A DNA stretch of 64,000 nt, taken from NCBI GenBank assembly GCA_019828565.1, contig JAHDYR010000062.1, positions 731,666-795,665 on the forward strand, in the 5' to 3' direction. The notes under the pieces are model-generated. The model searched no databases and was not told the origin of the DNA. It saw only the letters and a list, made by a program, of their open reading frames with translations. This stretch comes from Carpediemonas membranifera BICM (lineage: Eukaryota > Protista > Fornicata). The position numbers were made by a program, and so were the translations under genes. Position 1 is the first letter of the stretch, and the number at the start of each line of letters is the position of its first letter. Positions 39,593 through 45,604 of the stretch are shown one piece after another.

Positions 39593-42500
39593 TTACTCGC
39601 GGATTCTGACCCGCACCGCCGGGACGTCGACGTCCTCGTAAGTGTCGGGGTTCGAGCACGAAAGCACGAGCGGCACGAACTTCTGCTCTGCATGCACTGC
39701 GAGTCCGCCCACCGTCGTCACGAGCCCTGACACCTTGGCACCAAGCCTCTCGCTCTTCTTCTCCTCGCCCCAGAAGTCCATGTATAGCATCGCACGGCCA
39801 GCGCTGACCATGTCGACGCTGAGGCCAAATGTCGTCTTCATGTACTCAACAACTTCACCGAGCGTCGGGTCGACCTGGGGAGGCTCAATAAAGTCCCAAA
39901 GTGTGACCTTGCGGTCCATGAAATCCGCAGTTTTCGCCTCACCAGGCTCGGAGAGCGCGAAGAGAGGCAATGCGAGGTTGATGAAAGCGTTCTTGTAGCA
40001 TTCGATAGCCTTCTTCTGGGCCACAAGCTTGTAAAGCTCGATGGACGTGAGACCAGCGATGAGAGCGGTAGTTGTAATCATCGCAGGGATGATCTTACCC
40101 GCAATACGCTTGACCTCAGCACGCGACACAGTGGGAATCTGGTAGTTGGCAGCCCGAAGATTGGCGGTGGCGGCGATGAAGTCAATGTGGTGGTTGGAGT
40201 CATCATCCTTCTCGAACTCGAGGGGAGTGACGCTAAGGCTGGCGACGGCCTCAGCGCTGACGCCCGTGGTGTCAACGGGTCCGGTGCTGTCGTCTTCTTC
40301 GTCCTCCTCGACGGCGATGCGGACTGAGGATGAGGGTACGAACACGGGCGTCTTGATCTCGCGAGCAAGGGCAAGAACATCCTCGCGGGAGGTGCGACCG
40401 TCGACACCGAACGCAGTGGCGAGTAGAACCGCGGTGGCGTAGACGAAGTCAGCGTGGAGGGTGTTGTCTGGATCAAACGGCGTCGGGGTGGGTGGCCGCT
40501 TCGTGCCAGACCAGAAGGGGAGGCCGTCAGACGTCTTTGCGTCCTCGGGGAAATTGAACAAAAGCTGCCGGATCTTGTGGTCGAAATGCTGGTCAAACTC
40601 GGCTCTGGCCATGGCCACGCAGGCCTTGACGTCCTTGGGAGGGTTACGGGCGAGCTCTACGACGACTGCCTTCACCTCATGCGACACATCCTCTGCAATA
40701 ACTCCACTCTCCTTAAACTGCACCAAAGTTTCGAGACTACGAGAGAAAGTGCCTTCAAACTTGTCCCGAGCCCACGTGATGCAGTGGTCGATGACGTTGG
40801 GGAAGTTGTGGAGTGTGCACGAGGGGATAGACTTCTCGGGCGGGTCCTGTGTTGAGCCGTAGCTTTCGGTGAGGTTGGGTACAATCACCTGAACGTTACC
40901 CTTCGTGCCAAGGGTGCCGGACTCCAGCAGGGGAAGGCCGTAGAAGACGCAGCGGGAGTCCACGTAGCGGCGGGTGGGGACGTTGTCGAGAGCGTTGCAG
41001 ACACCGGTGAGGTTGTCGAAGAACGCGTCTGAGAAGACGTCCTCCGTCTCGACGTCGATCTTGGCCACGAGAGGGCGCACTATCATATCAGGGTTCATTG
41101 CTTGAGCTGCGCGGGCGGCCACCTCGGACTTGGGCTGGCCGATATCCGTGTCCCGGAAGAGGAACTGTCTAGAAAGATTCGACCGCTCGATCGAATCCAT
41201 ATCAGTGACTGTGATCTGCCCAGCGGCGCCGAGGCCCATCATGGCGAAGTTCTTGAGATACTCACAGCCAAGAGCACCTGCTCCAACAAGGAAATAGCGC
41301 TGTGCGGCGAGAGAGCGCTGGAACTCATGGCCGAAGACAGCAGCCTGAGCGTCATACCGCGTTCCAGCGGGGGCGGTGTCGACGGGAATGGCCTCGGGGA
41401 GGGCCTCGAAGGCGTCGAAGTACAGGAATTGACGGAGAGGCGAGTACTTGTGGGAGACGGCCTTGAGCACTTCCTGGGTGGCAATGCCAGCGATAACAGC
41501 GCACACGGGGGCTAGGGCGCCGCGGCAAGTGGCCGTGAAGGCGCGGAGCACGGGCTCGAAAGTGGCGGCGGCGGGGGCGTCAGAGATGGCCTGGGCGTGC
41601 TGGTCAACGAGCTGGCGCATGGCCTCAAGGTCTGCGTCAGTTCCATCGGGGTAGCGGCCGCGGGCAGTCAGGAAGGTGTCGAGGGCGAGGTGGCAGAGAT
41701 GGAGCTCCATAGGACGAGTGAACTTGGCGAAATCCGTATCGACAAACTGCGGGGCGATTATGGCCTCTGTCAGAGGCTTGAATGCCACCGTCTCCTGGCG
41801 CTTCACCTGAGTGATGTAGCCGCCGCGGATGTACTTGGGCTCGTTGGTGAAGTCTTCGTTCGGAAGGGTGAACGAGTATGGGGTCTCCATCTTGATAGCG
41901 CGGGGCACGCCATCGTTCAGTGAAGGGATGCCGTGCACATCGCTGAAGATGACCTGGTCGCCGTCAGAGAGGTCCAGGCGCTCAGTATCGTTGCATACGA
42001 CAGTAGGGTTGGCTGTGTTGCCGACGAACGTAACGACACCGGTGACGGGGTCCTCGCCGTCGGTGTCTGTAACAAGGTGGGCGTCGCCGAAGTCTGCGAA
42101 GACGCGGCCGGCTAGACCAGCAGTGGTTGCAAGGATAAAGGCGGCACCCACGGCTCTGGCCATTGCAGAGAGGGAATGGGCGTCCTCAGAGGACATCGTG
42201 GAAACAACGACGTCAAAGAGGCCGAGGAAGTCGTGATCGACCGCACCCTTGTGGCATGAGACGGAGACATGGCTGTTCAGTGCAGCGAGGGCAGGCATGG
42301 AGACCTCCGCGCGGTTCTGGCCAATGTGGGCCTCGGTCGCATAGTAGTGGGTGCCGAGATCCATCATGGTGATGTTTTCGTTGTCGTGGAGCACCACAGC
42401 GCCTACACCACTGAGGATAAGGTTCTTGGCGAGCTCACATGCAAGGCCCGACATTCCAAGGATGAGAACCTTGGATTGAGACATTTTCTGCATCGCTTCA

Positions 42501-42594: not shown

Positions 42595-42882
42595 ATCGAT
42601 TGACTTCGTGTCGTGGGAATGGGCTTAAAACTGCACCGCCGTGAGATTATTGCCGAGGGCCGGGGGGACTTGAGTACACTACTGCGGGTGTACAGTCACC
42701 GATGGCTGAGCGACCGCGTCTCCCGGGCTTCGGCTCTTTCTTACTTGCGGGCTTAATACGCCATCAAATTCATATTCAGGTGATCTTTGCTGCTTCGGCG
42801 GCTGAGCACCACCCCAATTGTATCGGAGGTGGCTGTGGCTCCGCCATGGCCACCGCACTTTAATACACAGCGACCGGAGATA

Positions 42883-45604
42883 ATGCAGTCTGAACGACGC
42901 AATGAGGATGTTTTCAGGTCGTTTGACCTGATGGATCTTTCTGATTCCCTACTGAAAGGCATTTATCGTTGTGGTTATCGTGAACCAAGTGTTATTCAGC
43001 AGAAGGCGATCGCTCCCATCATTAAGGGGAAGGACGTCATCGCACAGGCTCAAACAGGTACCGGTAAGGTTTGTTATTGCCTATAATCTTATCCAGACAG
43101 CAGCTTTCGGCATATCAGCCCTCCAGCGCATCAACACCAACTCCCCGAAGCTTCAAGCCCTCATCCTGAGTCCAACACGCGAGCTCGCGACCCAGACCAC
43201 CGACGCTTTAGCCATGCTCGGCCAGTTCATGGGTGTCCGCATCGCCACATGCATTGGCGGCTCCAAGGTCTCCGAAGACGAGCGCGCGCTCCATGCCAAC
43301 CCACACATCGTCTCAGGCACACCCGGCCGCGTGCTAGACCTCGTTGGCCGTGGTACCATCAACCTCAGTGACATTGAAATGCTTATCATCGACGAGGCCG
43401 ATGAACTCTTTGATCGAGACTTCCTCAAGGACGTCACGGCCGTCTTAGCCCAACGCGGAGTGAGGACACAAACGGTGTTGTTTTGTGCCACGTTCCCACC
43501 CGAGATCAAGAAGCTTACCGAGCTGATCGAGCATCCCGTCCGTATCACCAACGAGGAGCAGTTGACGAGCTCCAATCTCGAGAATTATCGGGTCCATGCT
43601 GGCGAACACAAGCTAGATACCGTTCTCGACCTCTACCACCGCATGACGATCTCCCAGGCGGTGATTTTCTGCAACACGAAGGGCACTGTCATTGAACTCG
43701 CCACTGCACTCTCGCGCCATGGCTGCCCCACAGCGCAGATGCACTCTGGCCACAAGCAGGCGGATAGAGACAATGCCATGGATGAATTCAGGTCTGGTCG
43801 CAAGCGGACGTTGGTGTGTACCGATATTTGGGCAAGAGGTATCGATGTCCCGCAGGTTAACGTCGTCATCAACTTCGACGTGCCGAATGACAACGATACG
43901 TTTGTACACAGGATTGGTAGAGCCGGTAGGTTTGGCCGTAGAGGCACTTCTATCACTCTGGCGACTGACGGCGACGTTCTCAACCTGGAAGAGGCTGAGG
44001 CTCACTTCGGTTTGACTATTAAGGACTTACACCAAGATCAGATCGATCATGGCGTTGCAAGGACCGCGGAGAAGGCCGTGAAGGGCATCCTCAACTTCTT
44101 GACCGAGGCAACACTCGTCAAGACGGCCAACCAGCTCGACATGCTTACCCACCCTGTTGTCGAGGTCGACCTGGCGTTAGTCGACTCGTTCAACGCGAGT
44201 GTGCACCAGACACACCTCCCCCCTTTCCTCCTCCAGGCAGTTGCAGGCATTGTACGCCTGCTGTGCGTTGCTCGAGAGAACCTGGCGCTTGCATACAGGG
44301 TGACAGAGATGGTCGCCAGACTCATCGCTAAGCATATCACAGCAGCAGACGCAGTGAGCAGCCGCATCGTCGGCCATGCCAGCGTCCTCCTCGCGCATCT
44401 CTACGTCCACAAGGTCGCCTCTGTCGTCGTCGTCCGGGACGTTGTCGACCTCATCCTCGACAACTGGTCCGACAACGCCTTGTGGAACGTGATGCAGATC
44501 ATGGAACTCACAATGTCGGCTATGCGACACGACAGCAAGACCACACTTGACCAGATCGTATCAAGGATCAAGCAAAAGGCCGGAACGGTTACCCAACCCT
44601 CACGTCGAGCCCGTATTTACGTAGAAACCATCGCTGAGCTCCACAGCGAGAGGAGCAAGCCCCCAGCAGTCCTACCGGGTGAGCTATCTCACGTTCCGAA
44701 GGCAGTGACGCTCAAGGACTATCAAAGGGCAGAGAAGTTCGGCCGCTGGTGGCTGGGCGCGTCCGAGGTGGCCGAAGTCCGCCGCGAGAAGGGGTTGTCC
44801 GAGCACCAGCGGCACCTTGAGTATGCAGGGCAGCTCGGCATGAACACAGAGGCCAGGAAGCTCCTCGTAGCGGGCCTGTTGAATATACACTGGCAGGTGA
44901 TGGGCCCTACGAGGCACGGGAGCGAGCTGCTCAAGATCGCGGGTAAGAATCAGGAGGATCTTCCAATCGCCATCGCCGCGTGTGCAGAACACGACCCAAA
45001 CCCTACCGCTTTCTACGCCCGGCTAGCTGTCGAGACAGCCAAGTCCGAGCTTACTGGGGCGTCCAAGCGCTGGGCGAGGGTCTGGAGCGATGCGTTCACT
45101 CGGGACGGGGAGAAACTCGCGGGGCTCAAGGACAAGGAGGTGGTGAGACTCGCCATCGTCTATGCTGGTCTCATTGCTGCAGACATCATGCCCCTGCACA
45201 AGCTCGGTCTCGTCATGGGCGACCACCATCTCGGTGGTAAGCACGGGAAGCGCATGGATTTATTCGCCAGATCCTTGCTCGTGAGGCTGCTTGGCTCGGC
45301 GGGAGTGGCGCCAGTCGCAGTCATGGTGACTGGGCGATCGGTGAAAGCTGTCACCAAGGAGGGGCGGGCAAGGGCGATTGATAGAGTCGCTGGGAACCTT
45401 TCAGATCTGAGACGAAAACTTGACGGCGAGGAGAAGAAGGAGAAGGATAAGATCCGCAAGATCTGTGATATGACTCTTGTCGACTTCGATACAGTCAGCG
45501 CTAATGTCCACAAGGCCCATGCAGTAATCGTCAAGGAGACGAGGACGGTGGTGAAATCCATGGCCGATCGGAAGCGGGTCAAGGCGGAGCTGAGGCTCGG
45601 CTGA
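42883..45604 (+). CDS. eIF4AIII/Fal1-like DEAD-box helicase fused to NOM1/Sgd1-like MIF4G-MA3 domains; 28-nt intron 43069-43096
   Basis: AQTGTGK|[41 protein letters not shown]. Without a stop it continues into [10 protein letters not shown] (MIF4G), GRWWLGA and [12 protein letters not shown] (MA3). Confidence 0.85.

What the first reader, a model, noticed from the sequence alone, without database searches (positions are those of the whole stretch)
42883..45604. eIF4AIII/Fal1 helicase fused in one ORF to its NOM1/Sgd1 activator
Seen: a complete DEAD-box core continues through a short linker (about 44040-44070), with no stop, into MIF4G ([10 protein letters not shown]), GRWWLGA and MA3 (GMNTEARK) motifs. 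Established: Fal1-Sgd1 in yeast and eIF4AIII-NOM1 in humans are separate interacting proteins needed for 18S rRNA biogenesis. Inference: a Rosetta-stone fusion that dedicates this helicase to ribosome biogenesis and may uncouple it from the exon junction complex.
Basis: partly seen in the sequence, partly recalled or inferred. Interest (0 to 1): 0.8.

Follow-up and report, generated by a model that had tools for sequence, protein, structure and literature searches.

The report
Helicase fused to its MIF4G activator
In the free-living protist Carpediemonas membranifera, one gene encodes both an eIF4A3/Fal1-like RNA helicase and the NOM1/Sgd1-type protein that binds and switches on that helicase in other eukaryotes during small-ribosomal-subunit assembly; I found no earlier description of this natural fusion, and it still lacks transcript-level proof.

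Summary
The window comes from Carpediemonas membranifera. The gene has exon 1 at 42883-43068, a 28-nt GT..AG intron, and exon 2 at 43097-45604. It encodes the 897-aa public protein KAG9390909.1, annotated only as "DEAD/DEAH box helicase".

- **Helicase half (residues 1-373).** This is a complete DEAD-box core. It scores best against eIF4A3 and is the only eIF4A3 candidate in the genome. A separate canonical eIF4A exists elsewhere.
- **Junction.** After a hinge of about 7 residues the frame continues without a stop.
- **Tail (520 aa).** Pfam does not recognise it. Exhaustive HMMER, profile-profile comparison (probability 99.9 %, E 1e-32), family motifs and an AlphaFold model all place it in the NOM1/Sgd1 family (MIF4G + MA3). 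The model's best structural match is the CWC22 MIF4G domain from the eIF4A3-CWC22 crystal (Z 23.2).
- **Rest of the genome.** I found no second NOM1/CWC22-like gene, no Mago and no PYM.
- **Sister genome.** An assembly that is probably C. frisia carries the tail as a stand-alone 516-aa gene. The fusion is therefore young, or was undone there.

Helicase orthology is favoured but not decisive (AU p = 0.063). The domain contact could not be inspected.

Verdict: a real fused gene and a new variant of a known helicase-cofactor pair.

The parts
42883..43068 (+). Exon 1 (62 aa): N-terminus, Q motif and start of motif I (ends ...TGTGK)
   Evidence: Pfam DEAD positions 3-27. Identical to residues 1-62 of P0001.
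43069..43096 (+). 28-nt GT..AG intron splitting motif I (GK|T)
   Evidence: The Pfam DEAD match runs from profile position 27 in exon 1 to 28 in exon 2. The public model P0001 uses this splice.
43097..43549 (+). Rest of RecA1 (to about residue 213): motifs I, Ia, Ib, II (DEAD at 161) and III (CAT at 192)
43589..44026 (+). RecA2 (about residues 227-372): motifs IV, V (with the eIF4A3-type W307) and VI
44030..44050 (+). Hinge between helicase and MIF4G (residues 374-380; pLDDT below 50)
   Evidence: Helicase homology to eIF4A/eIF4A3 runs to residues 372-376. The first MIF4G helix starts at about residue 377-380.
44051..44647 (+). MIF4G domain (about residues 381-579, ten helices)
   Evidence: pLDDT about 90. 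(4c9b_B CWC22 MIF4G: Z 23.2, rmsd 2.6 A, 217 residues). (hhalign).
44084..44098 (+). G392-I-L-N395-F396: counterpart of the G-L-I-N171-K172 helicase-binding hot spot of human CWC22
   Evidence: alignment with full-length CWC22 numbering. (PMC4482076: N171D/K172E abolishes eIF4A3 binding). N is invariant and G nearly invariant in A1.
44741..44761 (+). G-R-W-W-L-G-A linker motif, a signature of the NOM1/Sgd1 family
   Evidence: 37 of the 39 other NOM1/Sgd1-family hits carry G.WW. It lies in the stretch of the family profile that does not align with CWC22.
44801..45331 (+). MA3 domain (about residues 631-807), beginning with the family motif M-N-T-E-A-R (44840-44857)
   Evidence: (cwf22 MA3: Z 14.7, model 268-507). 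(hhalign through the MA3 region)..
45356..45604 (+). C-terminal helical region rich in K/R (22 of 82 residues), plus the stop codon
   Evidence: By analogy with the RNA-binding C-terminal region of Sgd1 (PMC7237134); this is inference.

Best explanation
This is a genuine gene fusion in Carpediemonas membranifera. The organism's only eIF4A3/Fal1-type DEAD-box helicase is joined at its C-terminus, through a hinge of about 7 residues, to the MIF4G-MA3 body of its only NOM1/Sgd1-type protein. That body has lost the usual long N-terminal extension.

Proposed mechanism (inferred):
- The MIF4G domain binds the helicase within the same chain. Its N-terminal helices, carrying the conserved G..N motif, contact RecA2. 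Its C-terminal helices contact RecA1.
- This sets the ATPase state, as Sgd1 does for Fal1.
- MA3 and the basic C-terminal region hold the module on the 5' domain of the 18S pre-rRNA in the SSU processome.
- The enzyme is therefore permanently paired with its cofactor and dedicated to early 18S processing.
- The apparent absence of Mago and PYM, and so of an exon junction complex, would have removed the helicase's competing partners and made such a fusion tolerable.

Shown here: the gene structure, the identity of both halves, and the uniqueness of both halves in the genome. Inferred: the contact within one chain, activation, rRNA targeting and the order of events.
For: **Gene structure.** Structure and open frame. 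The same model is in GenBank as P0001. That annotation was built with RNA-seq intron hints and PASA (PMC8516963).

**Helicase half.**
- eIF4A3 is the best solved relative: 341 bits against 326 for eIF4A1.
- The best long database hits are named eIF4A-III or Fal1, at 44-46 % identity.
- The ML tree puts it on the eIF4A3 side of a split supported 98/99.
- At discriminating columns it has 3 eIF4A3 states and 0 eIF4A states, including W307 in motif V.
- The genome's other eIF4A-family gene (P0174) is canonical eIF4A, and the next paralogue is DHH1.

**Tail.**
- Exhaustive phmmer found 41 hits. All Pfam-checked hits are MIF4G+MA3, and named ones include Sgd1 and a NOM1-like protein.
- hhalign against the family, with the tail left out of the family profile: probability 99.9 %, E 9.7e-33, 405 columns.
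- The family motifs are present.
- AlphaFold pLDDT is 83. The best structural match is the eIF4A3-bound CWC22 MIF4G, Z 23.2. The top 17 Foldseek hits are chains of spliceosome entries that one search lists for CWC22 or its yeast homologue.

**Junction.** There is no room for two genes: helicase homology ends at residues 372-376 and MIF4G starts at about 377-380. The first in-frame Met after the junction is M411, beyond the binding motif.

**Rest of the genome.** No second NOM1/CWC22-like locus. No Mago or PYM.

**Partner biology.**
Against: - No reads or transcripts could be laid across the junction, so a sequencing error that removed a stop, or separate products, is not formally excluded.
- The helicase sits on a very long branch (3.9 substitutions per site). 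A clade with translation eIF4A costs only 7 lnL units (AU p = 0.063).
- Pfam MIF4G and MA3 models do not match the tail at all.
- The residue after the invariant Asn is Phe, not the Lys/Arg of the binding hot spot.
- The full-length model has pTM 0.52, so no confident domain docking is predicted.
- The sister assembly carries the tail as a stand-alone gene. Fusion is therefore not required for function.
Confidence: 0.75

Rival explanations
1. The fusion is an artefact. Two adjacent genes, helicase then NOM1-like, appear merged because of an assembly or base-calling error that removed a stop. Alternatively the locus produces two separate proteins through an internal start or processing.
For: No read evidence was obtainable. 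The sister assembly has a stand-alone 516-aa orthologue that begins exactly at the MIF4G boundary. GC3 differs somewhat between the halves, 0.64 against 0.73.
Against: - The two homology blocks abut within about 7 residues, leaving no space for a stop, an intergenic region, a 5' UTR or a start codon.
- They are in the same frame for 835 codons, while the other frames are closed.
- There is no in-frame Met before residue 411, which lies beyond the conserved first helix.
- The contig is 1.55 Mb, from an assembly that used nanopore long reads. The gene model was made with RNA-seq hints.
Confidence: 0.1
2. The fusion is real, but the helicase is a divergent paralogue of translation eIF4A rather than the eIF4A3/Fal1 orthologue. 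The protein would then be a lineage-specific eIF4A-MIF4G module of unknown pathway, for example translation or splicing, and not an 18S-biogenesis factor.
For: The AU test does not reject a clade with eIF4A (p = 0.063). Mean identity is nearly equal, 43.5 % to eIF4A3 and 42.7 % to eIF4A. The branch is very long. No CWC22 was detected in a genome that has introns, so a splicing role for the tail cannot be excluded.
Against: - The free ML tree, PDB ranking, named best hits and discriminating columns all lean towards eIF4A3.
- A canonical eIF4A already exists.
- The tail groups with NOM1/Sgd1, not with eIF4G or CWC22. phmmer against the PDB gives no CWC22 or eIF4G hit even at E 10, while NOM1-family proteins score 35-54 bits.
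- The tail carries the G.WW and MNT..R motifs. G.WW falls in the part of the NOM1/Sgd1 profile that does not align with CWC22.
- eIF4A3/Fal1 is retained even in yeasts that lost Mago and Y14 (PMC11888146).
Confidence: 0.12

Closest known systems
Fal1-Sgd1 (yeast) / eIF4A3-NOM1 (human, trypanosome) helicase-cofactor pair in 18S rRNA maturation
   Same: The same two protein families. The helicase is eIF4A3-like. The tail has MIF4G + G.WW linker + MA3 + a basic C-terminal region, as in Sgd1/NOM1. In yeast the MIF4G domain binds Fal1 directly and stimulates its ATPase, and the C-terminal region binds RNA (PMC7237134).
   Different: Here the two are one polypeptide. The 200-450-residue N-terminal extension of NOM1/Sgd1 is missing, with the helicase in its place. 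Sequence divergence is extreme: 17-23 % identity, and no Pfam match. Motif III reads CAT instead of SAT, and Phe replaces Lys/Arg after the invariant Asn.
eIF4A3-CWC22 complex (PDB 4C9B)
   Same: This is the best structural match to the tail's MIF4G domain (Z 23.2, rmsd 2.6 A, 217 residues). The G..N hot spot corresponds to CWC22 G168/N171. The two-domain MIF4G+MA3 layout is shared.
   Different: CWC22 is a spliceosomal protein that holds eIF4A3 inactive. The tail shows no direct sequence match to CWC22, and its G.WW motif lies in the part of the NOM1/Sgd1 profile that does not align with CWC22.
eIF4A-eIF4G (MIF4G/HEAT1) translation initiation complex
   Same: The general principle of a DEAD-box helicase regulated by a MIF4G domain. 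Structural similarity is Z 16-17.
   Different: The genome has its own canonical eIF4A and three eIF4G-like genes elsewhere. Neither the tail nor the helicase groups with them.

Membership tests
DEAD-box helicase (eIF4A-like minimal core) | Two RecA-like domains carrying motifs Q, I, Ia, Ib, II (DEAD), III (SAT), IV, V and VI | tested here: met
   Pfam DEAD and Helicase_C. Motif positions are listed. Motif III is CAT (Ser to Cys); the rest are canonical.
eIF4A3/Fal1 orthologous group | Groups with eIF4A3/Fal1 to the exclusion of translation eIF4A | tested here: inconclusive
   The free ML tree places it with eIF4A3, and the eIF4A3/eIF4A split has 98/99 support. Forcing it with eIF4A costs 7 lnL units, AU p = 0.063. 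Discriminating columns give 3 eIF4A3 states against 0 eIF4A states. PDB bit scores are 341 against 326.
eIF4A3/Fal1 orthologous group | A single copy per genome, alongside a separate eIF4A | tested here: met
   The own-genome search finds only this gene, canonical eIF4A (P0174) and DHH1 as close relatives.
eIF4A3/Fal1 orthologous group | Assembles with Mago-Y14 into an exon junction complex | not testable with these tools
   Mago and PYM domains were not found in the genome. No specific model for Y14 was available. Binding cannot be tested here.
NOM1/Sgd1 | MIF4G domain | tested here: met
   The Pfam model fails. hhalign gives probability 99.9 %. The AlphaFold model matches the CWC22, UPF2 and eIF4G MIF4G domains at Z 23, 19 and 17.
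NOM1/Sgd1 | MA3 domain downstream of MIF4G | tested here: met
   The Pfam model fails. The hhalign alignment runs through the MA3 region. The structural match to the cwf22 MA3 domain is Z 14.7.
NOM1/Sgd1 | Family motifs G[KR]WW (linker) and MNT..R (start of MA3) | tested here: met
   GRWW is at residue 611 and MNTEAR at 644. 37 of the other 39 family hits carry G.WW and 37 carry MNT..R; the exceptions include truncated proteins. The sister-assembly orthologue P0002 matched neither search pattern; it has C-N-T-E-A-R-R at the MA3 start.
NOM1/Sgd1 | Long N-terminal extension before MIF4G | tested here: not met
   The helicase occupies that position. The stand-alone orthologue P0002 also starts at the MIF4G boundary.
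NOM1/Sgd1 | Binds and stimulates the Fal1/eIF4A3 ATPase; nucleolar; needed for the A0/A1/A2 cleavages | not testable with these tools
   This rests on the literature only. The conserved G392/N395 hot spot is compatible with binding.
CWC22 | Closest sequence family is CWC22, a spliceosomal MIF4G+MA3 protein | tested here: not met
   The tail gives no CWC22 hit against PDB sequences even at E 10. The named hits among the 41 exhaustive ones are Sgd1, NOM1-like or generic names, with no CWC22, and the hits carry the family motifs. The G.WW region of the family profile does not align with CWC22.

The most novel reading that the evidence does not exclude
Carpediemonas has reduced the whole eIF4A3 network to one polypeptide. 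With Mago, PYM and any detectable CWC22 gone, the fused protein would be the only eIF4A3 and the only CWC22/NOM1-type MIF4G-MA3 protein. It would then be an obligate helicase regulated within its own chain, possibly covering whatever splicing-linked role remains as well as 18S processing. The stand-alone gene in the sister assembly, which lies 283 bp downstream of a gypsy element, would be a secondary fission.
Probability: 0.15. Interest if true: 0.75.

Novelty: new variant of a known kind. Interest (0 to 1): 0.55.

Why it matters
A natural covalent fusion of a DEAD-box helicase with its MIF4G cofactor is independent, "Rosetta-stone" type evidence. It suggests the eIF4A3/Fal1-NOM1/Sgd1 partnership is ancient and functionally central, extending it to metamonads.

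No chain named NOM1 or Sgd1 turned up in the sequence searches of the Protein Data Bank. A single-chain version is therefore a convenient object for structural and enzymatic work.

It also fits a pattern in which loss of the exon junction complex leaves eIF4A3 with only its ribosome-biogenesis role. This organism is already known for losing core machineries (PMC8516963).

In GenBank the protein is labelled only as a DEAD/DEAH box helicase, so the NOM1/Sgd1 orthologue of this lineage is hidden from domain-based surveys.

Tried and rejected
- **Pfam on the tail.** Nothing at E up to 10. phmmer of the tail against PDB sequences gave only spurious WD40 hits.
- **Word-index protein search on the tail.** It found only the protein itself.
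- **Pfam MA3 across the whole genome.** No hit anywhere. That model is blind in this lineage, so the blank is not evidence of absence.
- **Other helicase-MIF4G fusions.** None among the 120 best long eIF4A3-like proteins. No ESM Atlas cluster shows that architecture. No paper was found.
- **First combined alignment for the full-length fold (A2).** It misaligned the MIF4G rows onto the helicase and was discarded. A3, which uses full-length NOM1 rows, was used instead.
- **Full-length model.** It returns only pLDDT and pTM, so the MIF4G-RecA2 contact could not be examined.
- **A 27-nt GT..AG stretch at 44010-44036.** It resembles the 5' end of the real intron. I considered it as an intron and set it aside, because it lies inside the helicase homology and would keep the frame anyway.
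- **Exon joining.** I sent no joined exon sequence to any search tool. Searches used exon references or the database protein P0001. The exons were concatenated only inside script 98, to check the length and composition.
Full report
**Origin and gene structure**

The window is G000:C54:731666-795665 of Carpediemonas membranifera. The six-frame ORF list shows two forward open frames. The one at 42787-43086 carries an ATG at 42883. The other runs 42971-45604 and contains the rest of a DEAD-box helicase plus a long tail.

The DNA shows a 28-nt GT..AG intron at 43069-43096, immediately after the codons for T-G-T-G-K. Pfam's DEAD model matches profile positions 3-27 in exon 1 and 28-166 in exon 2, so the splice is exact. 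The word search returned the public 897-aa protein P0001 (KAG9390909.1, "DEAD/DEAH box helicase"). It equals 62 aa of exon 1 plus 835 aa of exon 2. That annotation was produced with RNA-seq intron hints, Augustus and PASA (PMC8516963).

I sent no joined exons to any search tool. Searches used exon references or P0001. The exons were concatenated only in script 98, to verify length and composition.

**The helicase half**

Pfam gives DEAD and Helicase_C. All motifs are present, and motif III reads CAT instead of SAT.

Evidence on which subfamily it belongs to:
- Against solved structures, eIF4A3 is best (341 bits), followed by eIF4A1 (326 bits), yeast eIF4A and DHH1.
- Among long database proteins, the best hits are named eIF4A-III or Fal1, at 44-46 % identity.
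- Within the genome, the only close relatives are a 399-aa gene (P0174) and DHH1. The best hits of P0174 are all translation eIF4A, at 60-63 % identity.
- A 39-taxon ML tree (LG+C20+F+G4) separates eIF4A3 from eIF4A with 98/99 support and puts the fused helicase on the eIF4A3 side. Its terminal branch is 3.9 substitutions per site.
- Forcing it into the eIF4A clade costs 7 lnL units, AU p = 0.063.
- At 9-17 discriminating columns it has 3 eIF4A3 states and no eIF4A state. One of them is W307 in motif V. P0174 shows 5-8 eIF4A states and 0-1 eIF4A3 states.

I read the helicase as the divergent eIF4A3/Fal1 orthologue. This is favoured, not proven.

**The tail (residues 378-897)**

Pfam finds nothing even at E 10. 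Pfam MA3 finds nothing anywhere in the genome. phmmer against PDB sequences gives only noise.

More sensitive methods agree with each other:
- The exhaustive HMMER search of 1.8 billion representatives gave 41 hits.
- The best hit (P0002, E 1e-21) is a 516-aa stand-alone protein. The next nine all carry Pfam MIF4G + MA3.
- Named members include "suppressor of glycerol defect" (Sgd1) and "nucleolar MIF4G domain-containing protein 1-like".
- Apart from P0002, 37 of the 39 other hits carry G.WW and 37 carry MNT..R. The exceptions include truncated proteins. The tail has GRWW at 611 and MNTEAR at 644.
- A profile of the tail plus P0002, compared with a profile of 28 NOM1/Sgd1 proteins that excludes both, gives probability 99.9 %, E 9.7e-33, over 405 columns from MIF4G through MA3.
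- ESM Atlas features and structure point the same way.
- An AlphaFold model built on the family alignment has mean pLDDT 83, with ten MIF4G helices and an MA3 bundle.
- The top 17 Foldseek hits are chains of spliceosome entries that one search lists for CWC22 or its yeast homologue.
- VIA-align ranks the CWC22 MIF4G from the eIF4A3-CWC22 crystal first (4c9b_B: Z 23.2, rmsd 2.6 A, 217 residues). UPF2 (Z 19) and eIF4G (Z 17) rank lower. The cwf22 MA3 domain matches at Z 14.7.

In sequence the tail is NOM1/Sgd1 rather than CWC22. It gives no CWC22 hit in the PDB at E 10, while NOM1-family proteins score 35-54 bits. The G.WW linker region of the family profile does not align with CWC22.

The alignment with full-length human CWC22 places the tail's G392-I-L-N395-F396 on CWC22 G168-L-I-N171-K172. 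The N171D/K172E mutation abolishes eIF4A3 binding. The N-terminal MIF4G helices anchor RecA2 (PMC4482076).

**The junction**

Helicase homology to eIF4A and eIF4A3 runs to residues 372-376. That leaves only about 6-9 residues of a normal helicase C-terminus. In both models the first MIF4G helix starts at residues 377-380. Residues 374-380 form the only low-confidence hinge.

There is no space for a stop, an intergenic region or a start codon. The other two forward frames are closed there. The first in-frame Met after the junction is M411, past the binding motif. These points argue strongly against two merged neighbouring genes.

**Genome context of the pathway**

Pfam MIF4G hits elsewhere in the genome are three eIF4G-like genes and UPF2. 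The NOM1-family profile detects CWC22 in the PDB at E 1e-39, yet in this genome it finds only this locus. Mago and PYM (Mago-bind) give no hit at E 1. UPF3 gives a weak hit.

These are six-frame searches of an assembly with 89 % BUSCO completeness. No eukaryotic positive control was available. I therefore treat the absences as probable, not certain.

**Relatives**

P0002 lies on a 7.2-kb contig of GCA_002919055.1 (PPCM01). The same assembly encodes an eIF4A that is 79 % identical to the C. membranifera eIF4A. From its GC content and its kinship it is probably the C. frisia metagenome bin discussed in PMC8516963; this is inference.

There the NOM1-like gene is stand-alone and starts at the MIF4G boundary. 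It sits 283 bp downstream of a Ty3/gypsy polyprotein ORF, and no helicase remnant lies on the contig. The fusion is therefore specific to C. membranifera, or it was split in the sister lineage.

No other helicase-MIF4G fusion turned up among the long eIF4A3-like proteins, in Atlas clusters, in one metagenome scan, or in the literature.

**Mechanism**

Established background:
- Sgd1's MIF4G domain binds Fal1 directly and stimulates its ATPase.
- Sgd1's C-terminal region binds RNA in the 5' domain of 18S.
- Both proteins are needed for the A0/A1/A2 cleavages (PMC7237134).
- Human and trypanosome eIF4A3 pair with NOM1 independently of the EJC (PMC11888146).

Inference for this protein: the tethered MIF4G regulates the helicase within the same chain. 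MA3 and the basic C-terminus (22 K/R in 82 residues) target the pre-40S particle. EJC loss removed the competing partners.

Two questions remain open. I could not test whether the tail activates the helicase (as Sgd1 does) or restrains it (as CWC22 does). I also could not test whether a 7-residue hinge allows the canonical interface, because only pLDDT and pTM are returned (pTM 0.52).

**Verdict**

The fusion is a new variant of a known helicase-cofactor system. Interest is moderate to high, and transcript confirmation is still needed.

Noticed in passing
L019:44-4264 and L019:4547-6097 (contig PPCM01002120.1 of GCA_002919055.1): In the sister assembly (probably C. frisia), the stand-alone NOM1-like gene lies 283 bp downstream of a 1406-aa Ty3/gypsy polyprotein ORF with protease, RT, RNase H, integrase and a weak chromodomain match. 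An insertion could have split an ancestral fusion, or the short-read contig could be chimeric.
   Followed up: partly
P0174 vs P0177, and P0001:378-897 vs P0002: Between the two Carpediemonas assemblies, eIF4A is 79 % identical but the NOM1-like protein only 25 %. The cofactor evolves extremely fast, which explains why Pfam MIF4G and MA3 miss it.
   Followed up: partly
window 44010-44036: A 27-nt stretch starts with GTTTG, like the real 28-nt intron, and ends in AG. It lies inside the last helicase residues. If spliced it would remove 9 codons in frame. This is probably chance.
   Followed up: partly
window 39593-42493 (-): An intron-less 966-aa ORF that reads like the ubiquitin-activating enzyme E1 (UBA1; my reading of the translation, not scanned). 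It is transcribed divergently from the helicase gene across a 389-bp intergenic region.
   Followed up: no
G000:C23:78500-87500 (L005), C21:34000-43000 (L006), C4:600500-609000 (L007), C37:86500-95000 (L008): The genome has three eIF4G-like MIF4G proteins (1102, 1085 and 696 aa) and one UPF2. In the 696-aa ORF the MIF4G match starts only at profile position 73, which suggests an upstream frame break or intron.
   Followed up: partly
G000:C39:823337-823728: A weak UPF3 (Smg4_UPF3) match is split in two pieces, with a TGA in the first. This is probably a small intron or a frame break. Mago and PYM domains were not found anywhere in the genome.
   Followed up: no
window 43670-43678 (residues 192-194): Helicase motif III is CAT instead of the canonical SAT. 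In yeast Fal1 the SAT-to-AAA change abolished ATP hydrolysis (PMC7237134), so the effect of Ser to Cys would be worth measuring.
   Followed up: no
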